Shown here piece after piece: positions 14,093 to 36,140 of a stretch of 64,000 nt of DNA. The stretch is taken from positions 62,001-126,000 of the IMG/VR virus record IMGVR_UViG_3300025364_000003. One strand, 5' to 3'. The notes under the pieces were generated by a model, which did no database searches, was not told the DNA's origin, and was given only the letters and a program-made list of their open reading frames with translations. The position numbers were made by a program, and so were the translations under genes. Each line of letters starts with the position of its first letter. The stretch's first letter is position 1.

Positions 14093-14099
14093 GTTTTCC

Positions 14100-17433: not shown

Positions 17434-17496
17434 TTGTTTACCTCTTGTTATAAACACTGGTAGGCTACCATAGATGCAGCCACAATTTTACCTAAA

Positions 17497-19559: not shown

Positions 19560-19573
19560 TTTCTTTCCTCGGT

Positions 19574-20174: not shown

Positions 20175-20188
20175 GTTCTGAATATACC

Positions 20189-20604: not shown

Positions 20605-20616
20605 TATTGCTCTTTC

Positions 20617-20808: not shown

Positions 20809-20966
20809 GGTTCCCATATTAGTAAATAAGTCATCAGGTGTGAACCGAATATGGATTTTATCCATGAATCAGACCCATATAGAAAAATACTGTTGTCCCC
20901 ATTTGGTGACCGGCCTTTTTATTTAATTCGGTGCAAACTGAGGAAAGCCCGTGATAACTTAGAATC

Positions 20967-21482: not shown

Positions 21483-21528
21483 CAGAAATAGGTTCAAACC
21501 TAGTCTAGGGCATGGTATATTCATAAGC

Positions 21529-22119: not shown

Positions 22120-22337
22120 ACATGTCCCAAAAAAGCCCCGAATATCGAAATGGATACGGAGACGCAAAAGCTGATCTCCTACGGCTAGTCAAGGAGGCTC
22201 TCAAGAGCCTCCATGAGGCTTGCCAAAATAATGGCTTCTGCGACCCCTCCGAAAAAGATAAGGAGCTTCTGAGGCTCCGTGAGGCCGAGCTACGCCGCAT
22301 TAGGGGCATGATCAAGGCATTAAAGCCAAAAGAGTGA
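22116..22337 (+). CDS. Small helical protein
   Basis: TTGA overlap; EYRNGY motif. Confidence 0.65.
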   Translation: MNMSQKSPEYRNGYGDAKADLLRLVKEALKSLHEACQNNGFCDPSEKDKELLRLREAELRRIRGMIKALKPKE

Positions 22338-22379
22338 ATTCTCTTTACCTGGGAAACCGGAAAAGGTAAGTTGTAGCAC

Positions 22380-23153: not shown

Positions 23154-23206
23154 CGAATAACAGTTATTTGGTGTAAATCTTAGAACGTCTATAATAGGAT
23201 AATAAC

Positions 23207-23452
23207 ATGCTCATCAAGCTCAAAGACCGCAACGGAACCATCCCGGACTTCGATCGCCAGCTCGGGGAGGCTCGATACTGTCTGCCGGACATGGAAATGT
23301 ATCACCGAGCCTGTCTCGTCCTGTACGACACCGAGGCCAACAAGTTCACCCTGTTCACCCGTGATCTGGTCACTTCGGAGTACATGGTGACTCAGGTGGA
23401 GGGAACCCGTCGGGGCTTGCAGTACAAAAAGTTCTGGGAAAAAGCTTCGTAA
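23207..23452 (+). CDS. Small hypothetical protein (leaderless)
   Basis: GG-TGTAAA-17-TAGGAT-6-ATG. Confidence 0.7.
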   Translation: MLIKLKDRNGTIPDFDRQLGEARYCLPDMEMYHRACLVLYDTEANKFTLFTRDLVTSEYMVTQVEGTRRGLQYKKFWEKAS

Positions 23453-23491
23453 TAGGTTCACAACCAGGCTTTGGCCTGATATATTAAGACC

Positions 23492-23656
23492 ATGGCCAAG
23501 CGAAACAAGAAGAACGTCTCGGACGTGAAGCGACGCAGTGCCGCTGCCGTGGCCGCTATCCTCAAGACTGGTGCTGGTAAGCACGGGGACCGTCGCTTGA
23601 AGCGGATGAAGACCCGTGCGGCCCAGAAGCGGGCTGCCTTCCGAGACTGGAGGTGA
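23492..23656 (+). CDS. Very basic 54-aa protein (MAKRNKK...GAGKHGDRRLKR...)
   Basis: Below the ORF-track cutoff; leaderless GG-TTCACA-17-TATATT-6-ATG promoter; stop overlaps the next start. Confidence 0.75.
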   Translation: MAKRNKKNVSDVKRRSAAAVAAILKTGAGKHGDRRLKRMKTRAAQKRAAFRDWR

Positions 23657-23853
23657 GCATTACTGAACGGGAAGAAGAAGCCTTCAAGAAGGGCTACGAG
23701 CGCTGTCGGCTGGATATGGCCCGAGAGCTGGGTCAACTCATTGCGTATTACTACAACAAAGGTCAGACCAATGGTGGTGATGCGCTCCGTCATGCTAGCA
23801 CCGTGCTGCGAGCTGTGAAGCCTGGACAGAAGCCTTGGAATCCAGATATTTGA
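23653..23853 (+). CDS. Small helical protein
   Basis: GTGA overlap; FKKGYE motif. Confidence 0.65.
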   Translation: MSITEREEEAFKKGYERCRLDMARELGQLIAYYYNKGQTNGGDALRHASTVLRAVKPGQKPWNPDI

Positions 23854-23879
23854 ACCGATTAATAATCGGTTCAAATATC
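23845..23879. repeat. Perfect 16-bp inverted repeat containing back-to-back GGTTCAAA elements
   Basis: GATATTTGAACCGATT-AAT-AATCGGTTCAAATATC. Confidence 0.9.
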
Positions 23880-23907
23880 GAGAAATTCGGGATAAGCTAA
23901 ATTTAAG

Positions 23908-24243
23908 ATGACCAAGCCCACCTTGATATTCTACACCACGTTCAAGAACGTTCCTTATTCCGATGAGGAGTGGGAGCGTGCCAATAAGTGGCGTGCCAAA
24001 TTGGCCCAGGACAATCCGACCTGGGCTGAGAAGCACCCCGAAGACGTAGAGCCGCTGAAAACCCGTCCCGTTCATTCGTTCAGATATGGTCACGCATGTT
24101 TCTCTCACGAGGAAGCCCGTAAGGTCTGTGAGCAAGCCTTGGAAAGTGGTGTCCAGATGGTGACCTACTCAGCTTGGGACAGTAATAAGCAGGTAGGGGA
24201 GTGGTCTAGGCGTCAGGGTGGACATTGGTACCAGAGTAAATAA
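23908..24243 (+). CDS. Hypothetical protein
   Basis: 111-aa ORF downstream of the promoter at 23870. Confidence 0.75.
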   Translation: MTKPTLIFYTTFKNVPYSDEEWERANKWRAKLAQDNPTWAEKHPEDVEPLKTRPVHSFRYGHACFSHEEARKVCEQALESGVQMVTYSAWDSNKQVGEWSRRQGGHWYQSK

Positions 24244-24508
24244 TACTAGTATTTGGGTTCACATTCATCTTTACAAGCGCACCACCAAGCGCATTCAGAA
24301 CTTGAATTCTGAGCTTCGCAGGCTTCGTGCCAAGGCTAAGGCTATGAAGCCGGGTCTTGACGACATCCATGCCTTGGAGGAGATGTATCCCGAAGAAAAG
24401 GCTATCATTTGGGGGCGTACCGAATACATCTGAGGTATCAAATATGCAGTTAGCCGAATTTTCTTGAAATAGGTTCAGAATCCAACAAATATAGGACATA
24501 TTAAGAAC

Positions 24509-24772
24509 ATGAGTAACCGACGTAAGCGTAAGCAGGCCCGTAAGCAGGCTCGCCGTGAGGAGCGTAAGACTCGTTTGGTCGAGCTGGAGTCCCGTCGCCT
24601 CCAGGAGGAGGATGCTGGGCTGGAGATGAGCACTGAGCGTGTCTCCCCGGTTCTGGTGGACGAGTGGGATGACTTCGACCCGGAGTACGAGGAGCGCATC
24701 CGCAAGGACCGTGCCATCAAGGATCGTCGTGCCCGTAAGCAGGAGCTTCTCAACGAGGCTCTGAGCCGCTGA
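24509..24772 (+). CDS. Highly charged small protein (paralog 1)
   Basis: Leaderless promoter; C-terminus EWDD..EERIRKDR..RKQELLNEAL. Confidence 0.75.
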   Translation: MSNRRKRKQARKQARREERKTRLVELESRRLQEEDAGLEMSTERVSPVLVDEWDDFDPEYEERIRKDRAIKDRRARKQELLNEALSR

Positions 24773-24822
24773 AAAAACCTAAAAAGGTTTAAAACCCCAC
24801 CCTAATAAGGTATATTCTAATC

Positions 24823-25140
24823 ATGGCAGACAACAGGACCCGTAAGCTCGACCGCAAGGCCATCAAGCGTCTCCAGAAGGCCATTCAGCGTCTCGATCGT
24901 CAGATCGAGCGGGAGATCGAAACGCACCCTGACGGAGCCGAGTCCCCGTTCCTCTTCGACTTGAACGACGTGAGGTGGGTTCTGGAGCTACAGCTACAGC
25001 GACTCGACCAGCAGATGGACCCTCCGGGCGAGTGGGACGATCGGGACGAGTCCCGTGAGGACCGAATCCGGGAGGACCGCAGCCGTAAGGCTTGTCGTGC
25101 GGACAAGCAGTTTTTGTTCGATGAGGCCCTGGGTCTTTAA
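24823..25140 (+). CDS. Highly charged small protein (paralog 2)
   Basis: Leaderless promoter; C-terminus EWDD..EDRIREDR..DKQFLFDEAL. Confidence 0.75.
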   Translation: MADNRTRKLDRKAIKRLQKAIQRLDRQIEREIETHPDGAESPFLFDLNDVRWVLELQLQRLDQQMDPPGEWDDRDESREDRIREDRSRKACRADKQFLFDEALGL

Positions 25141-25157
25141 AAGAAAAGAAGGTAAAA

Positions 25158-25442
25158 ATGGACGCTCTAGACAAGATCAAGGCCATGAGGGGTGACGCTA
25201 AACTTTCTCCCAAGGTTGCCATGTGTTTGGCACGGGAAATGCACGATTTGCCGGATGACCGACTCAAGGAAGCCTGGCGAGAGCTTACCGTGAGCAAGGC
25301 CCTTGAAGGGAGTGAGCTTTTGCTCACTCTGCATCCTTACATCGAGGTACTGATGGTGAATTTGGCCTCGGGTCTTCCTCGCCCGACCTGGGAAGAGACA
25401 CTGTCAGGCAAGGATCCTGCGGCTGGGCAGACCGTGGAGTGA
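25158..25442 (+). CDS. Stand-alone homolog of the MoxR C-terminal domain
   Basis: MHDLP..AW..LHPYIEVLMV..ASG matches MHDCP..AW..VHPYIEKLMV..ASG in 2557..3876. Confidence 0.75.
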   Translation: MDALDKIKAMRGDAKLSPKVAMCLAREMHDLPDDRLKEAWRELTVSKALEGSELLLTLHPYIEVLMVNLASGLPRPTWEETLSGKDPAAGQTVE

Positions 25443-25535
25443 CACAAGGGCTGAATCCGTTCGGCTCCAAATCCCCAAAAAGGTTCAAACCTGGCCTGAA
25501 TATGATATATTCAAGGCTAAGGAAGGGAGACCTAC

Positions 25536-25910
25536 ATGGGTTTTGAAATGCGTGACGAGTACATGGTTCGAGGTGAGGACGTGGACCACTGGTGCCCTGC
25601 TTGTGGTCACAAGATCGTTCCAATGGATACCTCGGATCGTCGGGGATGGTGGGAACACGAGAGCGTCGAGGCTTTCGGGCTCTGTGATGTGGCCGACGAG
25701 CTGGAGTCTCCGGTGATGCACGTGGAGTTCCTGCTGGCCTGGGACGACATGACCTGGGATACCGAGATTCTGGAAGTTCCGCCCATTCTCCACCACGAGG
25801 ACTGCACCGACGAAAATCGAATCGATTGGTTCCATCGGGTTCATGGAGGTGAAGCTAGGTACAGGAAGCTCGCTATGGCTGCCGTGTACCATCTTCAGCC
25901 TTACGCATAG
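25536..25910 (+). CDS. Putative Zn-binding acidic protein
   Basis: CPACG..HE...C motif; own promoter and SD. Confidence 0.7.
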   Translation: MGFEMRDEYMVRGEDVDHWCPACGHKIVPMDTSDRRGWWEHESVEAFGLCDVADELESPVMHVEFLLAWDDMTWDTEILEVPPILHHEDCTDENRIDWFHRVHGGEARYRKLAMAAVYHLQPYA

Positions 25911-26126
25911 GTTTAGGTTGGGCCTCATCAGCCCATAGTAGGGGTGGCGAGTTCCCTATGAACAAGTGAGGTGATGCTCACAAAAAAAGCCCCTAGCCTC
26001 GGAGAGGCCGGCGGTGGGAGCCGTAGCGGGACCCGTGGGGCCTGAAAAGGTGACGAAGCGGTACCGTACCCACAATTCTATCCATATTAGGTTCAAACCC
26101 CAAGGGGGATAGGATATTCTAGGACC

Positions 26127-26423
26127 ATGAAGACGATCACGAAGGCAGACCTCACCAAGATCCGAAGCAATCTTGCCCTGCACGCCCTACCGGAGGATGC
26201 GGTCAGCTACAAGTGGGAGCAGGTTTCCAGCGCCATGGGAACGGTTCCTATGCTTGAGACCGTTCGGGGGCTCAAGATCGTTCTGTTTCTCGTCAAAAAG
26301 GCCGAGGTCATAATGACGAGCGAGGTTGCTCTCCGGGGCTCTGAGGGCACCTTTGTGGGCTTCGAGAAGATTGAGACTATCAAGAACAAGGCCAATGAAC
26401 TTTTGGCCGTTTTGGAGGGATGA
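26127..26423 (+). CDS. Hypothetical protein (leaderless)
   Basis: GG-TTCAAA-17-TATTCT-6-ATG. Confidence 0.75.
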   Translation: MKTITKADLTKIRSNLALHALPEDAVSYKWEQVSSAMGTVPMLETVRGLKIVLFLVKKAEVIMTSEVALRGSEGTFVGFEKIETIKNKANELLAVLEG

Positions 26424-26533
26424 TTTATGGGTGTGTCGAGACGCATCTCGGAAATTGTCCTCCGTAAACAAAAAAGGGTTCAAAGATTAGCCAGACTATG
26501 GCATTCTAAGAACCATAGAGAGGGAGACAACGA

Positions 26534-26815
26534 ATGACCTGGTACAGCAGCAAGCGAGCGACGACGGTTCTGGACGACGGTGAGGGGATGGAAGCGTGCG
26601 TCTACCACCGAACGAAGGTGGTCCGGTGGGGCCGAGGAACGGTGACGCTCAACTCTGGTGGACACGAGACGTACACCACCAAGAAGCGCATGAACGAGGT
26701 CTCTGAGGAGTACCGCCTGGGCTTCCGGGTCTTCCAGAAGGACCACCAGTGGTTCGTCAAGCTCCCCACGGGTTCGGTGGTGGAGTTCCGGGATGGGATG
26801 ACCTTTTCCTACTGA
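26534..26815 (+). CDS. Conserved-type phage hypothetical protein
   Basis: YH.T.VV...TLNSGG..T.TTK.RMN...FQKD..WFV motif; promoter and SD. Confidence 0.75.
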   Translation: MTWYSSKRATTVLDDGEGMEACVYHRTKVVRWGRGTVTLNSGGHETYTTKKRMNEVSEEYRLGFRVFQKDHQWFVKLPTGSVVEFRDGMTFSY

Positions 26816-26872
26816 CCCGAAAAAAAGAAAAAGGCGGTTCAGAAAATAACCGCCCCATGCTATAACAAGAAC

Positions 26873-27184
26873 ATAGGCAAGAGGCTAACCCAAGGAAGGC
26901 AGGGCCGCACCATTGGACAAGTGACACCTAGCTAGCTTCGTTGTTCTCGTCGAGCTAGTATTAGGACACCCGAGAGGGCCAGTAAAACAAGCCCCCATAA
27001 GTTACCTACCCCATTAGGGATGGCAGGGGGTGCAAGCGAGGACTCGGGGAGAGCCAAATGGCCTCGGCTCTCCCTTAAAGGAACCGGCCAAAGGTTATGG
27101 GTCTAAGTGCTAGGTAAAAGACCTGAGGCGGTGGGACGTTGAACGTCCCCGGAGAGCACTCAAGCTAGGGTCTGCCCAGTCTAC
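26873..27184 (+). ncRNA. Candidate ~310-nt structured ncRNA co-transcribed ahead of tRNA-Ala
   Basis: Promoter GG-TTCAGA-17-TATAAC but no ORF; 5'/3' end pairing and several strong internal stems. Confidence 0.6.
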
Positions 27185-27257
27185 GGGGTCGTAGCTCAAT
27201 TGGGAGAGCACCTGTTTTGCACGCAGGGGGTTGAGGGTTCAAGTCCCTCCGATTCCA
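27185..27257 (+). tRNA. trnA: tRNA-Ala(UGC)
   Basis: GGGGTCG/CGATTCC acceptor stem with G3:U70, loop TTTGCAC, GGTTCAAGTCC T-arm; no encoded CCA. Confidence 0.95.
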
Positions 27258-27401
27258 TTTAAGATGAACCTCAAAAAATTGATAATCGGTTCATAATCCT
27301 GACCAAGTCTGTGATTCTTAGAATCATGGAGGTTGAGGCTAGCTCCTAAAAAGCCTCCCAACAACCAACCAAGTTCACAGAGAAACCAAAGGAAACAAAT
27401 C

Positions 27402-27878
27402 ATGCCCAAGCTCACTTCCACCGGTCGCAAGCCCGCTCTCGATCTCACCGGCGTCGAGTCCCTTCTCGGTCGCTACTTCTCGGAGGACCAGCCCGGCGTC
27501 GAGGCCCTCGCCAGCGAGTTCGAGATCACCCCGGCCACCGTCCGCAAGTACCTCAAGCTCGCCCTCGGCAGCCTTCCCCGTGGCCGTGCGGCCCTGCTCC
27601 CCCGTGAGCCCCGCAACGTCAAGGTGCTCATGAACGGCATCTCGACCGAGGATCTTCTCGGTGCCGGCCGGGTCGAGCTTCTCCTGCGTCACCGTGAGGC
27701 CGGCGTCAGCCTGACCGCCCTCGCCAGCGAGTTCGGGATCAGTCGTGACCGGGTGACCAAGCTCGTCCGGGCCCACGAGCCGGAGAGCGAGCCGGAGGTC
27801 GCCGAGGCGTCGCCGGAGCCGGAGAGCGTCCAGGTGCCCGATTCGGAGCCGGTCTGCCTCGACGAGGCGGTGGCCTGA
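27402..27878 (+). CDS. Tandem-HTH protein with sigma4-like C-terminal HTH and acidic tail (paralog 2)
   Basis: STGRKPALDLTG, ATVRKYLK, LPRGRAAL.PRE, LLG.GRVELL, LTALASEFGISRDRV shared with 8215..8748. Confidence 0.8.
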   Translation: MPKLTSTGRKPALDLTGVESLLGRYFSEDQPGVEALASEFEITPATVRKYLKLALGSLPRGRAALLPREPRNVKVLMNGISTEDLLGAGRVELLLRHREAGVSLTALASEFGISRDRVTKLVRAHEPESEPEVAEASPEPESVQVPDSEPVCLDEAVA

Positions 27879-27907
27879 CACCAGCCAAGGTCTTAGCATT
27901 GGCCGTA

Positions 27908-27946
27908 GCCCCCTTCTCCCTGACCGGAGAAGGGGGTTTTTCTTTT
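27908..27946 (+). terminator. Intrinsic terminator
   Basis: GCCCCCTTCTCC/GGAGAAGGGGGT stem followed by TTTTCTTTT. Confidence 0.85.
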
Positions 27947-27987
27947 ATTCGGTACAAACCCAGTCTCGGATATGAGATATTAGAACC

Positions 27988-28560
27988 ATGACGAACGACA
28001 CGCAGAAGACGACGACCATTTCCCCTGACCCCGAGCCTCAGAATCTCACGACTCGGCTCATGTTTGAGGATAGTTGCAAGACTGTCCCCTGGCCTGCTCT
28101 GAGTCAGAGTCTTTCTGGGCTCCTTGAAAGGGACTTCATTCGGTTGGACGAGAAGTTGCATGCGAAGGGCTGGGATCTCCTGGGCGAGGGACGACATCGA
28201 ACCGGCTATTTTCACAAGAACGCCAATGGCGTTCTTAAGGTTTCCAGCAATGTTGCTGGCGTGAAAGCAAACCTGACCGAGCTGCACTATTCCAAGCTAG
28301 GCACCAAGATTTCTGTGACCTTGCCCTGGGCCGACTACAGGGTAGTAACCCTTCCCATTCCTCGGGTGCTGGGTCATCGACGAGTGGGACTGTTGTCGGT
28401 TCTTTGCGTCGAGCGAGTGCAACGAGTCTCGTACAGGGCTGCTAAAAATTTGGCCCAGAACCATCCTTGGATTGACGACGTGGATGAAGATGAAGATGGT
28501 CCCCAGGTTGGGTACACCAACGATGGACGGCTGGTCTGCTTTGACTGGTGTAACTTTTAG
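27988..28560 (+). CDS. Protein kinase-like fold protein (atypical)
   Basis: Gly loop LGEGRHR, VLKV, N..E, terminal GRLVCFDW; catalytic loop atypical. Confidence 0.5.
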   Translation: MTNDTQKTTTISPDPEPQNLTTRLMFEDSCKTVPWPALSQSLSGLLERDFIRLDEKLHAKGWDLLGEGRHRTGYFHKNANGVLKVSSNVAGVKANLTELHYSKLGTKISVTLPWADYRVVTLPIPRVLGHRRVGLLSVLCVERVQRVSYRAAKNLAQNHPWIDDVDEDEDGPQVGYTNDGRLVCFDWCNF

Positions 28561-28605
28561 AATATTCGGTTCACTAGGCTAGCGGATTTTGGTATATTAA
28601 AGACT

Positions 28606-29796
28606 ATGACGACGTTGGTACAGAAGTTCCTCCGTGAGCGCTCGCTGGCCGAGCTTGAGGCCGAGCACGGTGTCAAGGCTCGTGTGGCCGGGCACAAGTT
28701 CTCGCTCAACTACGATCAGATCGAGGCAAAGGACAGCGATCCGCTGGCACAGGAGTGCCGTGGCTTGATCCTGACGCCCGTTCAGGGTTCGATCGTGACG
28801 GAGGCTCCGCTTGGAGAGACCCGAATTCTGGCCCGTCCGTTCAACCGTTTCTTTAATCTGGGCCAGGAGGCTGCTGCCCCGGTCGACCTCGATCACCCGG
28901 AGACTTGTTTCTACGAGAAGATGGATGGAACGTTGACGATCCTCTACTTCGACGATGTTGTGGAGAAGTGGCATGTTGCCACCCGTGGGGTGCCGGAGGC
29001 CGATCTCCCGATCGATGGTTTCGGGCAGTACACCTTTCGGACGCTTTTCGAGCACGCCTGCCGTGATACCACTGGTCGTGACTTCAAGGATTTCGTTCGT
29101 TACTTGGATGTGCAGAGCACGTACATCTTCGAGCTGACGACGCCGATGAACCGTATCGTGGTTGATTATCAGGATTACAAGATCACCCTGTTGGGTGCTC
29201 GTGCCCGAGAGACCGGGGTGGAGTTTGATCCGGTGGACCTGGCACCGGTGCTTGAGGTGCCTCACGCTCCGGTGTACCGATTCGGCTCGTTGCAGGCAAT
29301 GGTGGATTTTGTGTCATCCCGTAACCCCCAGGACCACGAGGGCATCGTGGTTTGTGACCCCTCGTATCGTCGAATCAAGGTCAAGAACGCTGGCTATCTT
29401 GCCTTGAACAAGGTTCGGGACAGTGTGCTCAGTTCGCCCCGTGGGCTCGTGGAGTTGCTTCTTTTGGAGAAGCTCGACGATGCTCTGCCTCTGTTTCCTG
29501 ACCACGTTGTGGAGTGAGCTGAGAAGCTCCGAGATGCCTTCCGTGTACTGGTTCAGGATTTCCGCAAGGATTACCTAATCTGCCAAGAGGAGGCCGATCG
29601 GGGTTCCCCGGATGCACACCGCAAGTCTTTCGCTCTGGCGGTGCAGGCTCGGAAGCTTTGGATGGCTCCAATGATGGACGTGTACCAGGGCAAGGCTGAC
29701 GATCTTGTGAGCTGGATCAAGAGCCGGCGCCAGGTCGACGGTGGTTGGCCTAACAGCTTCTTGGATCAGGTTCTCCGGCAGCTAGAAAGCAAGTGA
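28606..29796 (+). pseudogene. T4 Rnl1-like RNA ligase interrupted by an in-frame TGA at 29515-29517
   Basis: ECRGL, FNRFFN, motif I YEKMDG, FEL, EGIVV, KVKN..Y; frame stays open 92 codons after the TGA to TGA 29794-29796. Confidence 0.8.
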
Positions 29797-29847
29797 ATAA
29801 GGTATAATGGGGTTCAAATCCGGGCCCCATTATTTTATAATAAAACC

Positions 29848-30021
29848 ATGATGAACCTGGATACGTCCAATATGGCTGACAGTCTCCAAAAGGATGTCCA
29901 GGCATTGCAGGGCCAAATTGAGGACGCCAGGCGGAACGTCGCCCGAGCCCAAGGGTGGGAAGAAGGCTACAGGGAAGGGCTGCGACAGGCTCTAGAACTG
30001 ATCAATATCACCTTGCGATAA
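29848..30021 (+). CDS. Small coiled-coil protein (57 aa, leaderless)
   Basis: GG-TTCAAA-17-TATAAT-6-ATG; WEEGYREG motif. Confidence 0.7.
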   Translation: MMNLDTSNMADSLQKDVQALQGQIEDARRNVARAQGWEEGYREGLRQALELINITLR

Positions 30022-30096
30022 ATCCAGAAAATCCCATAAAGGGTTTAAATCTCTCGTCGATTATCGTATATTCAAGAGTGTTGGGAGATCACGAGA

Positions 30097-30275
30097 TGGA
30101 AGCGAAGTCTGGCATGGTCGTTTACGCCGTCCACGTGTACATGGACTACGAGTACAACGACGTGATTTCGATCCACCTCACGGCCGAGGGTGCCGAAGCA
30201 AAGCGGGCCAAGGTTCAGAAGGACGAGCCGTGGCACCACGGGGTCTATGTCCGGGAGCGAAAGGTGGAACTGTGA
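30097..30275 (+). CDS. Small beta-beta-alpha family protein
   Basis: VYAVHV...VISIHLTAEGA; GGAGA SD. Confidence 0.6.
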
Positions 30276-30520
30276 AATACGTTCGACGAAAGTTCTTCCG
30301 GGAGTACCGTAAATACGGCCTTCCCTTCATGGCCGCCCAGCGGCTTGCCAGGCTTCGTGCCATTGGCGGTTTTGCCTGCGAGCTTCAGGCAGAACTCCAC
30401 AAGGAGGGTTTCGTGGTCGAAGTCTTGACCTTCTGTGACTGCTGCGGTCCCGAGGTCGTTCGCCTGCTCAAGGACGAAAAGACGTGGGATCTTCACTACT
30501 TCAGCCTCGCCCCCTGTTGA
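30272..30520 (+). CDS. Small protein with CDCC motif
   Basis: GTGA overlap with the upstream gene. Confidence 0.6.
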   Translation: MKYVRRKFFREYRKYGLPFMAAQRLARLRAIGGFACELQAELHKEGFVVEVLTFCDCCGPEVVRLLKDEKTWDLHYFSLAPC

Positions 30521-30578
30521 GCGAAAAAAAGTTCGCTATTAGGTTCAGAACCAAGGGCGAATAAGCTATATTCTAATC

Positions 30579-31469
30579 ATGGGCCGAGGGACGGCCCGAC
30601 CGGGAGTCAGGCCGGCGCAACCCAAGCACCTGACAGAAAGCAAAAAAATGGCCATTCGTTTTCGTCACATCAAGGTCAGCTCCACCATTTCTTACGAGCA
30701 GCGCCGTGAGATCGAGGAGCAGACGGGATCCAAGATCGGTTACCCCCGAATCCACCTGAGCAACCTCGACGACGAGGTCAAGCTCTCAATGAGCACCGGT
30801 CGGAACGAGTGCCTCGGGCTCTACTACATCGAAGAGGATGAGACGAGCCATGAGGGCCACGTGGTCGGGATCGAAGTCGATTACAACGTCCGCATCATGA
30901 GCGACGTTTGGGCCGATATCACCTATGCGGTGGTCTACGAGCCTACCCGTGAGCACACTGGCTGTCACTCCACCACGGTGGTGGATTACGCCACCATGGA
31001 AAAGGGACCGAAGGGGCCTTGTGGGATGTTCCGGCGTATCCAGATCGCCAACTCGGAATTTTCCGAGGCGATCAGCGAGATCACCCGTGCCGAGGTGGAC
31101 GCCGATCCGTGGCTTTTGGAGGTCTACGAGACGTGGAAGGCTGCCCAGAAGTACGCCAAGGCGCTTCAGAGCTACAACCGAAGCCAGGAGGACATTCAGC
31201 GCCACCGGCGGGCCGTCGAGCGTGACAAGTGGGTCCGTGTGACCCGTGGTCGCAAGGTCGCCCAGGGGACCGAGGGGATCGTGTTCTGGATCGGCGAGTC
31301 CCAGTATGGGGACAAGGTCGGAATCGCCCTCCCCAGGGAGGGTGGCACCTTCCGCAAGGAAAAGAAGACCGGACGTTACGGCAAGGTTTACGAGAGCTAC
31401 GCCGACGTGGCCTGGACCTACGCAAGGAACGTGGACGTGATCTCCGGCCCTGGTGGTCGGGTCCTCTGA
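30579..31469 (+). CDS. Hypothetical protein with C-terminal KOW/SH3-like segment (start 30579 or 30648)
   Basis: Own promoter; VRVTRGRKVAQGTEGIVFWIG...VGI. Confidence 0.8.
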   Translation: MGRGTARPGVRPAQPKHLTESKKMAIRFRHIKVSSTISYEQRREIEEQTGSKIGYPRIHLSNLDDEVKLSMSTGRNECLGLYYIEEDETSHEGHVVGIEVDYNVRIMSDVWADITYAVVYEPTREHTGCHSTTVVDYATMEKGPKGPCGMFRRIQIANSEFSEAISEITRAEVDADPWLLEVYETWKAAQKYAKALQSYNRSQEDIQRHRRAVERDKWVRVTRGRKVAQGTEGIVFWIGESQYGDKVGIALPREGGTFRKEKKTGRYGKVYESYADVAWTYARNVDVISGPGGRVL

Positions 31470-31475
31470 GAGGGG

Positions 31476-31501
31476 AAGGGGCCTCCGGGCCCCTTTTTTA
31501 T
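31476..31501 (+). terminator. Intrinsic terminator
   Basis: AAGGGGCC-TCCG-GGCCCCTT followed by TTTT. Confidence 0.85.
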
Positions 31502-31715
31502 TCCTATTCGGTTCACATTTTGTCTACCGTGGGCTATTCTAGTACCATGCTGAACAAGGAACCGAGGGCTGAGGATGTTCTAAAGCGAGTTTTGGCTCGT
31601 ATCGAGAAGAACACTCCCAAGTACCATCATCACCGAGATGTGAGTCGGACCTTGGATTCGATCTAGCAGATCCTACTTACGGAGCTTCGTTCTCTACAGA
31701 ATCGAGACTGATACC

Positions 31716-31946
31716 ATGTACAAGCCCCTGTCCTACCCTTCCCGTTTTGGGATGCACTGCACCTCTTGTGGGTCCCTCGTGGAAGCCTGCGAGCTTGCCA
31801 ATGGCTCCTTGGAGCAGTGTAAGGAGGATGCCAGCTTTCATATCGAAGAGTCGATCCGAAACGGGGACATAGACCATCCCATTCTAGGGACTGCCCATGA
31901 GATGCTCTGCGACACCATCCTGAGAGCCCGTTCACGGGCCCTGTAG
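31716..31946 (+). CDS. Small Cys/His protein
   Basis: HCTSCG...C...H. Confidence 0.6.
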   Translation: MYKPLSYPSRFGMHCTSCGSLVEACELANGSLEQCKEDASFHIEESIRNGDIDHPILGTAHEMLCDTILRARSRAL

Positions 31947-32035
31947 CCTCCTGGGAGGGCCAAAGTTTTTTCCCATAAGGGTTTAGACCTGGCCCTAAAT
32001 CTGTTATTCTAAAAACAATCGAGGGAGCACAAAAG

Positions 32036-32752
32036 ATGGATACCACGACTCAGGACCGAATCGCTCGCATGAAGGCTCGGAACGCCAAGCACAACCCGTG
32101 GGATCGCTGGTCCCCGTCGGAGCGTTCGATGTCGCTCCAGACCATGGGTGGTGCTCGTCCGATCAAGTGGACCACCGACGTCACCAAGGCGGGACAGGTC
32201 ACCGAGGACGGTTTCGTGTGGGCCTTCGCTGGTGGTCCGGTGGAGGGTACGCCGCAGGCTTCGGTCAAGAAGCGTGCCGATGGCAAGGTCGACGGTCGCT
32301 CCAAGGGTGTCCGCAAGTGCGGCAAGTGCGGGGAGTCCGGCCACAACGCTCGCACCTGTGGTCGCCAGCGCAAGTCGATCGCCAGCCTTCCGGCAAGCCT
32401 TCGCAAGCCGGTGGGCGAGTCCGAGCCGGCCAAGGGGCCAGAGTCTAAGCCGGTGCCGGACCAGATTTCGGCGGCAATGGGTCTTCCGGTGATCGAGCGT
32501 CCGACGAAGAGCACGCCCTCCGGCAAGGCTCCCAAGCCCCGCACCATGGCGGACCGTGAGTCGGCTCGTGGCGAGTCTCGGGCGAGCAGGAAGGGTTCTC
32601 GGAAGTGCGGCAAGTGTGGTCAGTCAGGTCACAACGCTCGGACCTGTAGCAAGGGTGGTGCCAAGCCCAAGGTCAAGCACTCTCGGGCTCGCCAGAACAC
32701 CTGTGGTCGCTGCGGTGGCAAGGGTCACAACGCTCGGACCTGTAATAAGTGA
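32036..32752 (+). CDS. Basic protein with three CCHC zinc knuckles
   Basis: CGKCGESGHNARTC, CGKCGQSGHNARTC and CGRCGGKGHNARTC (CX2CX4HX4C). Confidence 0.9.
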   Translation: MDTTTQDRIARMKARNAKHNPWDRWSPSERSMSLQTMGGARPIKWTTDVTKAGQVTEDGFVWAFAGGPVEGTPQASVKKRADGKVDGRSKGVRKCGKCGESGHNARTCGRQRKSIASLPASLRKPVGESEPAKGPESKPVPDQISAAMGLPVIERPTKSTPSGKAPKPRTMADRESARGESRASRKGSRKCGKCGQSGHNARTCSKGGAKPKVKHSRARQNTCGRCGGKGHNARTCNK

Positions 32753-32815
32753 AGGAATATCTGAATAACCGAAAATCGGTTCATAATCCCACCCTAGACT
32801 GGTATTCTTTAAACC

Positions 32816-33016
32816 ATGGACAAGCCGCTCACGAAGAACGACCAGATCAACATCTACCCCCTGATCGAGGACGGTGTCACCTACGGCTGGGCTGCCGAAA
32901 TCATGCTCTATCCCGGCGAAGAGTGTTCCTACCAGGACCGGGAGTGGCTCCGACTCGGCTACTTCTCCGACAAGGCCACCGCCCGCAAGCGGGCGCTTGA
33001 AGCAGTCAATGATTGA
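32816..33016 (+). CDS. Small protein (LGYFSDKATA motif, leaderless)
   Basis: GG-TTCATA-17-TATTCT-7-ATG. Confidence 0.75.
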   Translation: MDKPLTKNDQINIYPLIEDGVTYGWAAEIMLYPGEECSYQDREWLRLGYFSDKATARKRALEAVND

Positions 33017-33070
33017 CAGTGGAAGGGGAAACAAAAGGAAGAGCACAAAGAATTCAGCTCGTGTTATCAC

Positions 33071-33268
33071 GTGTGGTACGGCATCTGCCCCCATGAGGGC
33101 TGGGACATGCGCTGGTACTTCGTCCAGACCTATCAAACCGATGGGAATGCTATTGGCCGAGCCAGGAAGCTAGAAAAGGAAAGCAAGGCTGTCAGGGTCG
33201 TCCAGCACTGGTGGGATGGGAAGTCCTTCCAAGTCGAGGTAATTTACGAGAAAATGGGCAATACCTGA
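33071..33268 (+). CDS. Small hypothetical protein
   Basis: 65-aa ORF; start uncertain. Confidence 0.5.
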   Translation: MWYGICPHEGWDMRWYFVQTYQTDGNAIGRARKLEKESKAVRVVQHWWDGKSFQVEVIYEKMGNT

Positions 33269-33359
33269 ACATCCTAACAGGATAAGGAAAATAGGCGGCT
33301 AACCACATTTTTTCGATAATCGGTTCATAAAAGAGGTCTACTAGGGTATTCTCTTAACC

Positions 33360-33881
33360 ATGGACAACACGCACCACGGTGCCCCCAAGGGCACGCACAA
33401 GCTCTCCACCGCCGCCGTTCTCCCCTTCCTCCTCGCCGGTCGCTCGCTGGTGACCGTCCTGAATCGCACCACCGATGGTCACTACACCTACCGGATCCAG
33501 GCCCCCGGCAAGACCGCCAAGGAGCGCCGAAACGCCTCCATCCTCTTCGTGTCCGTTCTCACTGGACCGGACAACGGCGAGCGTGGCTCGTACACCTACA
33601 TCGGAATCCTCATCCGTCAGACCGGGGAGTTCAAGCTCACGGCGAAGAGTCGCCTTCCCAAGAGCAGCGCTTCTGTTGCCGGCTTCGACTGGCTCTGCCG
33701 TCAGGCTCGCCGGGAGAACCTCGACAGCTTCCCGCACGTGGAAGTCCGCCACCACAACGAGTGTGGCGCCTGCGCCCGAACCCTCACGGTCCCCGAGTCG
33801 ATCGACACCGGCCTCGGTCCAATCTGCGCCAAGCGCCTCGGCGCCCATTGGGCCAGGAACGACCAGCGCAAGGTCGCTTGA
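33360..33881 (+). CDS. DUF6011-domain protein (leaderless)
   Basis: C-terminal CGACARTLTVPESIDTGLGPICA; N-terminal TYRI..FVSVLTGPDN. Confidence 0.85.
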   Translation: MDNTHHGAPKGTHKLSTAAVLPFLLAGRSLVTVLNRTTDGHYTYRIQAPGKTAKERRNASILFVSVLTGPDNGERGSYTYIGILIRQTGEFKLTAKSRLPKSSASVAGFDWLCRQARRENLDSFPHVEVRHHNECGACARTLTVPESIDTGLGPICAKRLGAHWARNDQRKVA

Positions 33882-33975
33882 CCCAACATGGGGACCCCTA
33901 AGGGGTCCCCGCCCTTCAGGGCTTTTCTTTTGCTAATCGGTTCAAAAGGCAGTCCGGATCGGATATATTAGAACC

Positions 33976-34209
33976 ATGAGCACAACGACCTATCCCGCCG
34001 CCGAGTCCGCCGCCAAGGCCATGCAGCTTCCGGTCACCGTCTGCAAGGTGACCCGTAAGTTGTACAACAGGACGGTGCCTGCCCTCAACGAGGAGCTGGC
34101 CGCCTCCCTGATCGCTTCCGCCGGGTTCCCTTGCGGAACCCCGGCCCACGAGGCCGCCATGGGTGTCCTTCGGGCTCGGTTCGAGTCCTACCTTTACAAC
34201 AGTTTCTAA
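33976..34209 (+). CDS. Small hypothetical protein (leaderless)
   Basis: GG-TTCAAA-17-TATATT-6-ATG; flanked by GGGGACCCC/GGGGTCCCC hairpins. Confidence 0.75.
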   Translation: MSTTTYPAAESAAKAMQLPVTVCKVTRKLYNRTVPALNEELAASLIASAGFPCGTPAHEAAMGVLRARFESYLYNSF

Positions 34210-34303
34210 GGCCCAGGGGGTCCCCAAACGGGGACCCCAACCTTTCTCGAAAAAAATTGTCTAATAGGTTCATAAAAGGGTCCAGCTAGGGTAATATCAA
34301 AAT

Positions 34304-35023
34304 ATGCCGATGACGAAGACCGCTACCGACGCCTACCTCGCTCTCCTCACCGCTGACCTCCTCACCCGTGAGGATGAGGTCGCCCTCGCTGCCATCGCCC
34401 AGGACACCGAACACCCCGAGTCCGAGAAGGCTCGTCAGGCCATGATCGAGGCCAACCTCCGGCTGGTGGTCCACGTGGCGAAGAAGTACCGTGGCCGTGC
34501 TTCCAAGCTCGGCGTGTCTTACATCGATCTCATTCAAGAGGGTAACATCGGTCTCATGACCGCTGTCGAGAAGTTCGATGGTGACCGTGGGCACCGCTTC
34601 TCCACCTATGCCGTTCACTGGATCCGTCAGTCCATCGGTCGTGCCCTCCAGAACAAGGCGAGCACGATCCGGGTCCCGGTTCACGTCCACGAGGTCGTGG
34701 GCAAGCTCAAGTCCGCCGCTCGGCTCATCGGTGAGATGAACGGTGAGGGTCCGACCCCGGCTGAGGTCGCTTCCTTTCTGGAGCTTCCCGAGGACAAGGT
34801 TACTCGCCTGTGGCAGTACGTCCGCCCCTGCGATTCCCTCGATCGTCAGGTGGGTTCCGAGGATGGTGACTCCGTGCTCGGTGACTTCGTGGAGGACACC
34901 GGCAACAGCCTGACCGATGCGGTCGACGATGCCGCTTCCAAGTCGCTCGTGCACACCGTGCTCCGCACCCTGACTCCCCGTGAGGAAAAGGTGCTCAAGC
35001 TCCGGTTCGCCGTCGGCGCCTGA
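34304..35023 (+). CDS. RpoD-derived sigma factor B, ending before region 4.2
   Basis: [71 protein letters not shown] then AVGA-TGA-TAG; GG-TTCATA-17-TAATAT-6-ATG promoter. Confidence 0.92.
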
Positions 35024-35044
35024 TAGCAACCCGTCCAGAACTAA

Positions 35045-35072
35045 GCCGCTCTCCGGGGCGGCTTTTCTTTTT
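35045..35072 (+). terminator. Intrinsic terminator right after sigma B
   Basis: AGCCGCTC-TCCG-GGGCGGCT followed by TTTCTTTTT. Confidence 0.85.
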
Positions 35073-35113
35073 AATCGGTTCACATTATCATCAATTTGGG
35101 GCAATCTCTAACC

Positions 35114-35332
35114 ATGCGATACACCCTCTTCATCAAGTACCCCGACGTCCCCTACGACTTCTACGAGGGCAATGACCTCGACTCCCACATGAAGGAAGCC
35201 AAGCGCCTGGCCAAGCAGCACCCCAAGGCCACCATCACCGTCTGTGACAGGCAGACCGATACCATGCTCTTCTCCAGGGAGAACGGTAAGGGGGGAGAGT
35301 GCAAGTTCTCCCTGTCCGGCATGTTCAACTAA
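35114..35332 (+). CDS. Small hypothetical protein (leaderless)
   Basis: GG-TTCACA-17-CAATCT-6-ATG at 35114. Confidence 0.7.
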   Translation: MRYTLFIKYPDVPYDFYEGNDLDSHMKEAKRLAKQHPKATITVCDRQTDTMLFSRENGKGGECKFSLSGMFN

Positions 35333-35356
35333 CATTCAAACCATAAGACTACAGAA

Positions 35357-35690
35357 GTCGTACGACTCAAGAGGGGTGAGAGCCCCCCTTTTCTTATGGG
35401 GGGGGCCCCCCCCTTTTCACCCCCTATCGAACCCCCCATGCTTATAGGGGGGGGTCCCCCTCCCCCCCCCCCGGACAAGATCAGTGGGGGTCCTATACTG
35501 GCATATGAGGTGCTTGACCCTCAAAAACAATTTTTGGGAAATTTTGAAAATGAAAACCCTTTTCGCAATATTTGGCCCTAAAATGAAGATTCTAAACAAA
35601 AGAGAGTGGAAAATCTGGTAGGAGACAAGGGGGGGGTATGAAATCAAATTGGGAATTAAAATTTTTGGGAAATTTTGAATTTTGAAAAGG
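35357..35690. other. Non-coding junction of G/C homopolymer runs, A/T tracts and a 20-nt direct repeat (candidate terminal-repeat end or packaging site)
   Basis: G8C8 near 35398-35413, further G8 and C11 runs, AATTTTTGGGAAATTTTGAA at 35529 and 35660; marks the GC-to-AT switch. Confidence 0.55.
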
Positions 35691-35738
35691 GTTGTTTATA
35701 GAATATTGTGCGGATATTAGTATTGAAGTAGCATTGAG

Positions 35739-36140
35739 TTGAGAATAGTTGCTTTAATGGTGGTTCTCGTAGAGGTGAAAACTGTTCACAAGAGCAAGGA
35801 GATAATTTTGGAGGGATTGCATTATCAAAAGACGGATGATCCTGCGTTTAGGGAATTTTATAAGGAACTTAGGGTTGGAGGGCTTTTTGAGGTGAGTGTC
35901 GATTATTATGAAACCGGAGCGTTCTTGGGAGGAGAATACTATGTGCTATTACCTGCTTTACTTCCAGGGAAGTCTATGATGTTTTTGGGTTGGATTGACT
36001 CTCCAGGGGAAGAGGTTGTTCTTAGGTCTGTTAGTGGATTTGAAAAAGTTTGGAAGCTTACAGGACCCAAGTGGCTCTTAGACGGCAAGGTATGGATACA
36101 ACGTGTGCCTACAGGTATACTCCAGCCTGTTGTGGGCTAG
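35739..36140 (+). CDS. SH3-like family protein (close paralog of the next gene's C-terminal domain)
   Basis: LLPGKSMMFLGWIDSPGEEVVLRS...LTGPKWLLDGKV. Confidence 0.75.
   Translation: MRIVALMVVLVEVKTVHKSKEIILEGLHYQKTDDPAFREFYKELRVGGLFEVSVDYYETGAFLGGEYYVLLPALLPGKSMMFLGWIDSPGEEVVLRSVSGFEKVWKLTGPKWLLDGKVWIQRVPTGILQPVVG

What the first reader, a model, noticed from the sequence alone, without database searches (positions are those of the whole stretch)
35357..35740. Sharp GC-to-AT junction with G/C homopolymer palindromes and A-tract repeats: likely end of a long terminal repeat
Seen: the leaderless promoter array and C-ending codon style stop at ~35.3 kb. There follow a GTCGTACGAC motif, self-complementary G8C8, more G and C runs, closely spaced A/T tracts and a 20-nt direct repeat (35529, 35660); then AT-rich polycistronic genes begin. 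Known: T5 and SPO1 carry promoter-dense host-takeover genes in long terminal repeats that enter the cell first. Inference: the left arm is such a module and the junction is a terminase cut or two-step-injection stop site. Homopolymer runs can also mark mis-assembly.
Basis: partly seen in the sequence, partly recalled or inferred. Interest (0 to 1): 0.65.

Follow-up and report, generated by a model that had tools for sequence, protein, structure and literature searches.

The report
Conserved early-block boundary inside a megaphage
This stretch is not a genome end or an assembly error: it is a conserved non-coding boundary (stacked G/C-hairpin terminators, then promoter-like A/T repeats) that closes a 35-kb GC-rich block of early-type genes inside a ~461-kb T4-like phage from salt lakes.

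Summary
The interpretation as the end of a long terminal repeat fails. The GC-rich "arm" is an internal ~35-kb island (window ~580-35,332) with ~40% GC DNA on both sides. It lies in a genome that assembles as a ~461-kb circle. Independent contigs from several salt-lake samples read straight through the junction, and depth is about equal on both sides (no 2x step).

The same junction sits at the same place in two diverged relatives (sigma protein 74% and 60% identical): G/C-run hairpins with T tails, an invariant ~50-nt block, and 2-3 copies of the A/T repeat.

The best reading is a transcriptional boundary. Two tandem intrinsic terminators, plus extra G/C hairpins, stop rightward transcription from an array of more than 20 leaderless sigma-70-type promoters. 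Promoter-like repeats then start the AT-rich operon that leads toward the T4-type portal.

The island also carries two sigma genes that lack region 4.2, and four tRNAs for A-ending codons, which the AT-rich remainder prefers.

The parts
580..35332 (.). GC-rich island (52% GC overall, 58% in its last 8 kb) inside a ~40% GC phage genome. Transcription units diverge: '-' strand promoters at 11310-20846 and '+' strand promoters at 21491-35077.
   Evidence: GC profiles; promoter scans; codon usage differs from the rest of the contig (AAG 0.77 vs 0.37, GAG 0.68 vs 0.25, AGA 0.09 vs 0.37)
34304..35023 (+). RpoD-like sigma factor (239 aa) with regions 2 and 3. It ends exactly where region 4.2 would begin. 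A paralogue (53% identical) lies at 18106-18804 on the '-' strand.
   Evidence: Pfam; search of the phage's own contig; alignments to a bacterial primary sigma and to the paralogue
35077..35332 (+). Last unit of the array: a promoter-like site (GGTTCA, N19, CAATCT, 7 nt, ATG) and a 72-aa ORF at 35114-35332 with GC3 0.86
35356..35367 (.). 12-nt palindrome containing GTCGTACGAC. It is conserved at the same place in L013/L025/L026 and degenerate in L018.
35373..35395 (+). Terminator-like hairpin 1: G4, a 6-nt loop, a C run, then TTTTCTT
   Evidence: consensus scan; ViennaRNA scan; G-run/loop/C-run plus T run conserved in L018, altered but still present in L013
35398..35417 (+). Terminator-like hairpin 2: G8C8 followed by TTTT. 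It is the most stable hairpin-plus-T-run in the island and its immediate flanks (window -2 to +38 kb; -26.8 kcal/mol in context).
   Evidence: G-run/short loop/C-run plus TATTTT retained in L018, L013 and L025
35420..35472 (+). Further C and G runs (C5, C6, G8-T-C5-T-C11) forming a third hairpin without a T tail. Relatives have two G-run/C-run hairpins here. The only point differences between assemblies lie in these runs (35419 A/C, 35461 T/C).
35470..35521 (+). Nearly invariant non-coding block (CCGGACA.GATCAGTGGG ... GGTGCTTGACCC). It contains a -35-like TTGACC at 35514-35519, followed after 17-18 nt by GAAATT (TAAAAT in L018).
   Evidence: alignments A1 and A2; a pattern scan found it only in this phage lineage
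35529..35548 (+). A/T-tract repeat, copy 1 (20 nt). Its 3' end supplies the -35-like TTGAAA (35544-35549), followed after 17 nt by AATATT (35567-35572).
   Evidence: 2-3 copies in each relative
35620..35636 (+). Conserved purine block ending in G8
35660..35704 (+). A/T-tract repeat, copy 2 (35660-35679), with -35-like TTGAAT (35675-35680), an 18-nt spacer and -10-like TAGAAT (35699-35704). TTGAAA-N10-12-TA(G/A)AATAT is conserved in all lineages.
35739..36140 (+). First ORF of the AT-rich side (in-frame ATG at 35757; GC3 0.42). The next two genes (36147-36827 and 36871-37704) are syntenic with L013 at 47% and 42% identity.
15667..16576 (-). tRNA-Glu(UUC), tRNA-Leu(UAA) and tRNA-Lys(UUU) downstream of array-type promoters. 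tRNA-Ala(UGC) lies at 27185-27257 on the '+' strand.
   Evidence: ARAGORN; Rfam

Best explanation
The stretch 35357-35740 is the conserved non-coding boundary between two expression compartments of one ~461-kb T4-like phage genome.

Its 5' half stops rightward transcription coming from the GC-rich array of leaderless, individually promoted early-type genes. It holds two tandem intrinsic terminators made of G-run/C-run hairpins with T tails, plus one or two further G/C hairpins.

Its 3' half holds promoter-like elements that start the co-oriented AT-rich operon leading toward the portal gene. These elements are an invariant block carrying TTGACC and 2-3 copies of an A/T-tract repeat whose end supplies a -35-like hexamer.

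Shown: the anatomy, its uniqueness in the genome, its conservation in diverged relatives, its internal single-copy position, and its continuity across assemblies.

Inferred: that the hairpins terminate transcription and the repeats promote it; that the island is expressed early by host sigma-70 holoenzyme; and that its host-like codon usage and its tRNAs for A-ending codons prepare translation of the AT-rich remainder.
For: (1) Position and orientation. Hairpins 1 and 2 lie 41 and 66 nt after the stop of the last '+' strand island ORF. T runs occur only on the '+' strand side, so termination would be unidirectional for rightward transcripts.

(2) G/C-run hairpins with T runs are this phage's terminator style elsewhere. 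Examples are the G8 hairpin at contig 31048 (A run, C5TCCGG...CCGG8, T run) and the G6/C6 hairpin at window 3894-3927, after the ATPase gene.

(3) Many island genes have a hairpin plus T run abutting the next promoter, for example at 27937/27951, 28555/28568, 31494/31510, 33923/33939 and 35063/35077. A stronger, multiple stop at the end of the array therefore fits.

(4) Conservation. The same order of elements follows the sigma region in L018 (sigma 74% identical) and in L013/L025/L026 (60%). Non-coding identity is ~73%, about the same as the neighbouring coding DNA. G/C-run lengths and loops vary, but hairpin plus T run is kept.

(5) The early-type promoter stops at 35077 and does not recur in the next 170 kb. 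GC3, codon usage and operon style all change at the junction.

(6) Sigma-70-like hexamer pairs sit at 35544/35567 and 35675/35699, and the -35-like TTGACC is invariant in all lineages.

(7) The junction is not a terminus or a chimera.
Against: - There are no transcript data of any kind.
- T tails are short (4 T), and the third and fourth hairpins have none.
- The folding energy of 35330-35520 is not better than dinucleotide shuffles (z = -1.0), because any set of G and C runs folds well.
- The -10 elements of the first two putative promoters are weak (GAAATT, AATATT).
- The -35 position of the last promoter is not conserved. Only TTGAAA-N10-12-TA(G/A)AAT is conserved.
- The amount of conserved non-coding sequence (~400 nt, including a 50-nt near-invariant block and repeated units) exceeds what a terminator and a promoter need. 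An additional DNA-level or regulatory role is therefore likely.
- The repeat occurs nowhere else in the contig, so it is not a general promoter class.
Confidence: 0.6

Rival explanations
1. The junction is the end of a long terminal repeat, a terminase cut site or a two-step-injection stop site (T5/SPO1-like).
For: The left side is a promoter-dense block of small genes, as in the T5 and SPO1 terminal repeats. The junction is rich in palindromes and repeats. One assembly's contig ends inside it at 35535, and one unitig breaks at 35461.
Against: The island has AT-rich phage DNA on both sides within one contig. The genome closes as a ~461-kb circle with the junction internal. Unitigs of runs X1 and X5 cross the junction without branching, and island-side depth is 0.86-1.3 times AT-side depth, not 2 times. 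The two contig breaks fall exactly on a C11 run and on the first copy of the 20-nt repeat, which are ordinary assembler break points. The portal is T4-type, a group that, from general knowledge, packages by headful. No terminase gene lies in the 206-kb contig, so this could not be checked.
Confidence: 0.04
2. The junction is a chimeric mis-assembly that joins a GC-rich and an AT-rich genome at low-complexity homopolymers.
For: There is a sharp GC step at homopolymer runs. The only base differences between assemblies lie in the runs.
Against: The same join is found in Logan unitigs of separate runs and samples. It is also in two ~461-kb contigs and a 40.7-kb contig from other assemblies. Diverged relatives carry the same left and right neighbours. 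A ~92%-identical strain in a microbial-mat run holds both sides at equal depth.
Confidence: 0.01
3. The conserved block and the A/T-tract repeats are mainly a DNA-level site. One option is a replication origin of the T4 oriF/oriG type (a promoter followed by an easily unwound region, with iteron-like repeats). Another is a binding platform for a phage regulator.
For: About 400 nt of non-coding DNA is as conserved as coding DNA. There are 2-3 direct repeats per lineage. A/T-tract density is the highest in the contig. A conserved promoter-like element sits immediately upstream of the AT-rich stretch. A conserved palindrome is present.
Against: There is no GC-skew inflection at the junction; skew follows gene orientation. 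No initiator or replication gene is adjacent. A-tract phasing is unexceptional. Nothing distinguishes an origin from a promoter region by sequence alone.
Confidence: 0.12
4. The junction is the edge of a recently inserted foreign element (a satellite, a transposon, or DNA captured from a GC-rich phage or host).
For: There is a compositional island with sharp edges. HNH endonuclease genes lie inside it.
Against: No integrase, transposase or recombinase was found among 33 island ORFs scanned. The two edges share no direct or inverted repeats. The left edge is an ordinary gene-gene boundary. The island, with the same GC contrast and the same neighbours, is present in lineages whose proteins are only 42-75% identical. 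It is therefore old and vertically kept.
Confidence: 0.05
5. The junction is a module-exchange (recombination) boundary like the PeSL cassettes of T4-type phages, conserved because it serves as a homologous crossover point rather than for its regulatory output.
For: The island has the composite stem-loop-plus-early-promoter architecture of PeSLs (PMC2839356, PMC4122927). Gene content just left of the junction differs between 92-93%-identical strains: a 1.2-kb Endonuclease VII/HTH insertion in L013 versus L025/L026.
Against: That indel is not bounded by the junction itself. This role is not exclusive of the regulatory one, and there is no direct evidence of crossovers at the junction.
Confidence: 0.1

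Closest known systems
PeSL (promoter-early stem-loop) cassettes in hyperplastic regions of T4-type phages (Arbiol et al. 2010, PMC2839356; Comeau et al. 2014, PMC4122927)
   Same: The phage is T4-type (gp20 portal). It has a block of mostly unknown small ORFs, each preceded by a sigma-70-like early promoter that directly follows a stem-loop with a T run. Gene content is variable between close strains.
   Different: Here the block is one 35-kb compartment, 12-18 GC points richer than the rest of the genome. Its transcripts are leaderless. The promoter has its own extended consensus (ATAATCGGTTCA-N19-TATATT). The block ends in a unique, conserved multi-hairpin junction that is not described for PeSLs.
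Early-region terminator that separates host-polymerase early genes from later genes (T7 TE, from general knowledge)
   Same: A strong intrinsic terminator sits at the end of a co-oriented early gene block and prevents read-through into later genes.
   Different: Here there are two to four stacked hairpins built from G and C homopolymers, followed by conserved repeats. The phage type is different, and the function is untested.
T5 first-step-transfer region / long terminal repeat, and the SPO1 host-takeover module in its terminal redundancy
   Same: A promoter-dense cluster of small early genes is bounded by a repeat- and palindrome-rich non-coding region.
   Different: The block is not terminal and not duplicated, depth is single-copy, the genome map is circular, and the portal is T4-like.
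Phage tRNAs that match codons preferred by the phage's later genes rather than by the host (T4 and T4-like cyanophages, from general knowledge)
   Same: The phage tRNAs (Lys-UUU, Glu-UUC, Leu-UAA, Arg-UCU, Ala-UGC) read the A-ending codons favoured by the AT-rich bulk of the genome.
   Different: The contrast between compartments is extreme and has sharp boundaries. Four of the eight tRNA genes lie inside the GC-rich block; three of these sit downstream of its promoters.

Membership tests
Long terminal repeat boundary (T5/SPO1 type) | The repeat region is present twice per genome, giving about 2x read depth relative to unique DNA | tested here: not met
   Contig k-mer depth, island side versus AT side: 13.8 vs 16.1 (X1), 17.1 vs 15.9/13.9 (X2), 8.25 vs 3.2-7.3 (X5). 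Depth is one value per contig, but the island-side contigs are mostly island sequence.
Long terminal repeat boundary (T5/SPO1 type) | The repeat lies at the physical end, with unique DNA on one side only and a branch in the assembly graph at its inner edge | tested here: not met
   AT-rich phage DNA lies on both sides in one contig. Unitigs cross the junction without a branch. The map is a ~461-kb circle.
Long terminal repeat boundary (T5/SPO1 type) | Read starts or molecule ends pile up at the terminus | not testable with these tools
   Only Logan contigs, not raw reads, were available for the runs that hold this DNA.
Intrinsic (rho-independent) terminator | A G+C-rich hairpin immediately followed by a T run, downstream of and co-oriented with a gene | tested here: met
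   Hairpin 1 is at 35373-35388 plus TTTTCTT; hairpin 2 is at 35398-35413 plus TTTT. Both lie after the stop at 35332.
Intrinsic (rho-independent) terminator | The structure is kept in relatives despite sequence change | tested here: met
   Run lengths and loops differ (G8C8; G7-AGA-C5; G-rich run then C5), but hairpin plus T run is retained in 3 lineages. With G/C runs, this is weak covariation evidence.
Intrinsic (rho-independent) terminator | Transcript 3' ends map to the T run | not testable with these tools
   No RNA run holds this DNA.
PeSL / hyperplastic early region of T4-type phages | Composite stem-loop plus sigma-70-like early promoter between small ORFs in a T4-type genome | tested here: met
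   Promoter array; hairpin plus T run abutting promoters; gp20 portal.
PeSL / hyperplastic early region of T4-type phages | Indels between close relatives are bounded by the cassettes | tested here: inconclusive
   One 1.2-kb indel exists between 92-93%-identical strains next to the junction. Its ends were not shown to be cassettes.
Sigma-70-type promoter (junction elements) | -35 and -10 hexamers with a 17 +/- 1 spacer, conserved in relatives | tested here: inconclusive
   Pattern matches at 35544/35567 and 35675/35699 (9 of 12). TTGACC is invariant, but the -10 is good only in L018. The last -10, TA(G/A)AAT, is conserved, but its -35 is not.
Replication origin with iterons | Direct repeats plus an AT-rich unwinding region plus a skew switch or an adjacent initiator gene | tested here: inconclusive
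   Repeats and AT-rich DNA are present. There is no skew inflection and no initiator gene nearby.
Known RNA family (Rfam) | A match at or above the gathering score | tested here: not met
   Only tRNAs matched in the window. In the junction the best match was 6C RNA at 28.6 bits against a cut-off of 47.

The most novel reading that the evidence does not exclude
This lineage of ~460-510-kb salt-lake phages keeps its genome in two deliberately different compartments.

The first is a ~35-kb GC-rich block with host-like codon usage, made of leaderless, individually promoted early genes. It also encodes the tRNAs for A-ending codons and two sigma factors that lack the -35-reading region 4.2.

The second is the AT-rich remainder, which depends on those products.

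Under this reading, the conserved G/C-homopolymer and A/T-repeat junction is the regulated gate between the compartments. Its alternating G and C runs allow alternative pairings, so it could act as a termination/antitermination switch or as the point where the sigma change takes effect, rather than as a passive stop.
Probability: 0.25. Interest if true: 0.7.

Novelty: new variant of a known kind. Interest (0 to 1): 0.45.

Why it matters
It removes a false lead: this is neither a terminal repeat nor a chimera. It also defines a clean, conserved landmark in an uncultured ~461-kb phage lineage. At this landmark, promoter type, leader type, codon usage and GC content all change within 400 bp.

If the compartment reading is right, the lineage would be a sharp natural example of a phage separating "run on host machinery" genes from "run on phage-supplied tRNAs and sigma" genes. 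The junction would then be a compact element for testing how very large phages time their gene expression. The stacked G/C-run terminators and the region-4.2-less sigma factors can each be tested directly in vitro.

Tried and rejected
- **att sites or target duplications at the two island edges.** A search for shared 10-mers, direct and inverted, found nothing meaningful.
- **GenBank phage matches.** DNA matched only sigma-gene fragments. The right-flank 277-aa protein had no match. The sigma protein search returned host-like RpoD hits only.
- **PHROGs and Pfam on right-flank genes.** Almost all are ORFans. ESM Atlas gave no usable hit for the 277-aa protein, whose own model has pLDDT 0.37.
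- **A middle or late promoter motif in the AT-rich part, by k-mer enrichment.** Only CTATTTAA stood out (7 copies, all '+' strand, mostly between or just upstream of ORFs). It is absent from the junction.
- **T4 late (TATAAATA) and MotA-box-like words.** These are not enriched.
- **Helical phasing of A-tracts.** Not exceptional.
- **RNA structure significance of the G/C region.** z = -1.0.
- **Rfam.** Nothing matched.
- **Host identification via GroEL in bacterial genomes.** Only 41-44% identical hits in unrelated MAGs, which is uninformative.
- **Terminase search in the 206-kb contig.** No terminase found.
- **The 461-kb IMG/VR record.** It is not held as a whole record, so its other 255 kb could not be scanned for a second copy of the island.

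Full report
**Observation.** It contains GTCGTACGAC (35357), G8C8 (35398-35413), G8 (35447), C5-T-C11 (35456-35472) and G8 (35629). It also contains an exact 20-nt direct repeat at 35529 and 35660.
- All eight G8/C8 matches in the 64-kb window fall within 239 bp here, against 1.8 expected for the whole window.
- In the full contig, five of the six G/C runs of 7 or more are here.
- The repeat core occurs nowhere else, even with three mismatches allowed.
- A/T-tract density (14 per 150 nt) ties the contig maximum, but helical phasing is ordinary.
- GC falls from 0.58 (27000-35332) to 0.33 (35501-35756) and 0.39 beyond.
- GC3 falls from 0.86 in the last left-hand ORF to 0.42 in the first right-hand ORF.

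**Context.** The window is bases 62001-126000 of a 206,528-bp linear IMG/VR virus record that CheckV rates 45% complete. The GC-rich "arm" is not an arm. It is an internal island, window ~580-35332, with ~40% GC DNA on both sides.

The right flank leads to a T4-type gp20 portal carrying an intein, a GroEL gene and homing endonucleases. The left flank carries SprT-like, NUDIX, RNA ligase and DnaJ genes. The nearest portals belong to two uncultured huge phages (484 and 595 kb) and to Microcystis, Flavobacterium and Rhodothermus myoviruses.

A 460,987-bp IMG/VR contig is 100% identical over three fetched stretches (13-21 kb each). The window's contig runs past the end of that contig and re-enters at its start. 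The contig's last ~41 nt overlap its first bases, imperfectly. A second contig of 461,086 bp exists. The genome map is therefore a ~461-kb circle, and the junction lies well inside it.

**Not a chimera and not a repeat edge.** The DNA is found in hypersaline-lake metagenomes, and a ~92%-identical strain occurs in microbial-mat runs.
- Logan unitigs of runs X1 (32800-36158) and X5 (32800-36124) cross the junction with 0-1 differences and no branch.
- X2 breaks only at the C11 run.
- The breaks at 36129-36179 are caused by a 17-nt tandem repeat.
- Depth on the island side versus the AT side is 13.8/16.1, 17.1/13.9-15.9 and 8.25/3.2-7.3.
- Another assembly reads through with only three differences in 14 kb. 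Two of them are bases that interrupt C runs (35419, 35461), and the third is the tandem-repeat copy number.
- A third contig ends at 35535, on the first repeat copy.

These are ordinary low-complexity break points. A collapsed terminal repeat would instead show 2x depth and a graph branch.

**What the island is.** A strong motif, ATAATCGGTTCA-N19-TATATT, lies 6-7 nt before an ATG. It reads as a sigma-70-type promoter (TTCAnA, 17 nt, TATATT) that would start transcripts at the ATG itself, making them leaderless.
- The core pattern occurs 14 times in the window against 0.15 expected.
- About 25 good copies lie between 11.3 and 35.1 kb. They are on the '-' strand up to 20846 and on the '+' strand from 21491 to 35077. 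There is one outlier elsewhere in the 206 kb.
- Many copies abut a preceding hairpin plus T run. This is the composite architecture described as PeSL cassettes in T4-type hyperplastic regions (PMC2839356, PMC4122927).

The island encodes two RpoD-like sigma factors, 53% identical to each other. Both stop exactly where region 4.2 begins. Relatives in the database are likewise ~230 aa with regions 2 and 3 only. Other island genes include:
- an Rnl1-type RNA ligase, an amidoligase and HNH endonucleases;
- a KaiC-like ATPase and a MoxR-like ATPase paired with a DUF2201/VWA protein;
- many ORFans.

No integrase or transposase was found.

Four of the contig's eight tRNA genes lie in the island: Glu-UUC, Leu-UAA, Lys-UUU and Ala-UGC. 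Three of them sit behind array-type promoters. Codon usage differs sharply between the island and the rest: AAG 0.77 vs 0.37, GAG 0.68 vs 0.25, AGA 0.09 vs 0.37 and TTA 0.04 vs 0.16. The phage tRNAs read the A-ending codons that the AT-rich remainder prefers.

By inference only, the host is GC-rich, the island is tuned to host translation, and the tRNAs serve the rest of the genome. The host was not identified.

**Conservation of the junction.** Contigs carrying sigma homologues show the same layout.
- L013, from a 507,812-bp contig (sigma 60% identical), has a GC-rich region with the same promoter motif. A cluster of G6-G9/C7-C9 runs follows, then a GC drop, then syntenic genes at 47% and 42% identity.
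- L025 and L026 are 92-93%-identical strains of L013 with slightly different run lengths. L013 has an extra 1.2-kb Endonuclease VII/HTH insertion just left of the junction.
- L018 (sigma 74% identical) has the junction directly after its sigma gene.

Alignments A1 and A2 show the following order of elements:
1. a palindrome;
2. hairpin 1 (G run, loop, C run, T run);
3. hairpin 2 (G run, short or no loop, C run, T run);
4. free C runs;
5. one or two further G-run/C-run hairpins;
6. a near-invariant block, CCGGACA.GATCAGTGGG ... GGTGCTTGACCC;
7. two or three copies of AATTTTTGGGAAATTTT;
8. a purine block;
9. TTGAAA-N10-12-TA(G/A)AATAT just before the first AT-side ORF.

Non-coding identity is ~73%, about the same as the flanking coding DNA. 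Selection is therefore acting on this stretch.

**Mechanism proposed.** Hairpins 1 and 2 meet the sequence definition of intrinsic terminators. They are co-oriented with the array and have T runs on the '+' side only. Hairpin 2 is the most stable such structure in the island and its immediate flanks, the only region for which scan results were inspected. The same G/C-run style is used at clear terminators elsewhere in the genome. They most likely stop rightward early transcription.

The invariant TTGACC has a -10-like hexamer 17-18 nt downstream. Each repeat copy ends in a -35-like hexamer with a -10-like hexamer at 17-18 nt. These elements most likely promote the AT-rich operon.

Termination and promotion are inferred, not shown. 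The extra hairpins, the 50-nt invariant block, the palindrome and the repeats suggest further regulation or a DNA-level role. Options include alternative G/C pairings acting as an attenuator, a regulator-binding site, or an origin of the promoter-plus-unwinding-region type. None of these could be tested. GC skew gives no origin signal, and Rfam gives nothing.

**Comparison and verdict.** Functionally, this resembles an early-region terminator placed at the end of a PeSL-like hyperplastic early block of a T4-type phage. It fails the tested criteria for a terminal-repeat boundary.

What is unusual:
- the 12-18 point GC contrast, kept in several lineages;
- the leaderless design;
- tRNA genes and region-4.2-less sigma genes inside the GC-rich block;
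- a boundary built from stacked homopolymer hairpins plus conserved repeats.

I rate it a new variant of a known kind, with moderate interest (0.45). Confidence is 0.6 in the terminator-plus-promoter boundary and about 0.04 in the terminal-repeat reading.

Noticed in passing
window 34304-35023 (+) and 18106-18804 (-): Two paralogous RpoD-like sigma factors (53% identical) both end exactly at the start of region 4.2, the -35-reading helix-turn-helix. About 15 database relatives of 228-242 aa also have regions 2 and 3 only. Such a sigma could not read the island's own -35-like element, which suggests an early-to-later switch.
   Followed up: partly
window 27333-27878 (+) and 8215-8748 (+): Paralogous double helix-turn-helix proteins (a 138-nt DNA repeat, 73% identical). 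One has a weak Sigma70_r4_2 match (E = 0.009). They could be a separately encoded partner for the truncated sigmas.
   Followed up: no
window 15667-16576 (-), 27185-27257 (+); contig 4106-4257, 33199, 42557: Eight tRNA genes lie in the 206-kb contig, four of them inside the GC-rich island. The identified anticodons read A- or G-ending codons (Lys-UUU, Glu-UUC, Leu-UAA, Arg-UCU, Arg-CCU, Ala-UGC x2). One has an odd anticodon loop.
   Followed up: partly
window 36129-36179: A 17-nt tandem repeat (GTTGTGGGCTAGAGATA) is present in 3 copies here and 4 copies in contig Ga0081526_100001. A 34-nt skip (1 copy) is seen in the ~92%-identical microbial-mat strain. Copy number therefore varies. The repeat also breaks k-mer assemblies.
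   Followed up: partly
window 35419 and 35461: The only point differences between independent assemblies over 14 kb are bases that interrupt C runs (A/C and T/C; the latter gives C17). This could be real hypervariability or a homopolymer sequencing error.
   Followed up: partly
window 50972-54199 (+): The T4-type portal gene (gp20) is interrupted by an intein with an HNH endonuclease. GIY-YIG homing endonuclease genes lie next to it (50164-50985) and at 63086-63931.
   Followed up: no
window 32036-32752 (+): This protein has three repeats of a CX2CX4HX4C zinc-knuckle-like motif (DNA repeats at 32303, 32591 and 32723). The L018 orthologue has faint zf-CCHC hits.
   Followed up: no
window 544-3876: A MoxR-like ATPase gene (2557-3876, +) lies divergent from a DUF2201 metallopeptidase/VWA gene (544-2052, -) at the left edge of the island. 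The GC drop on the left falls at the 3' end of the DUF2201 gene, with no special sequence.
   Followed up: partly
contig 108603, 116227, 143737, 175728, 199551, 201047, 203989 (window 46603, 54227 and beyond): The word CTATTTAA occurs 7 times, always on the '+' strand, mostly between or just upstream of ORFs, and several times right after a terminator. It is a candidate later-class promoter of the AT-rich compartment.
   Followed up: partly
window 35739-37704: The first three AT-side genes share a C-terminal motif (..LYLGW..PGEE..GPKWL..), so the AT-rich operon opens with a small paralogous family of unknown function.
   Followed up: no
L013:11248-12441: A 1.2-kb insertion carries an Endonuclease VII gene and an HTH_3 gene, relative to the 92-93%-identical strains L025 and L026. 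It lies just left of the junction.
   Followed up: partly
window 20118-20127 and 35357-35366: The 10-nt palindrome GTCGTACGAC occurs twice in the contig (about 0.2 expected). A near copy sits in a promoter spacer at about 6560-6570. It may be a protein-binding or restriction-type site.
   Followed up: no
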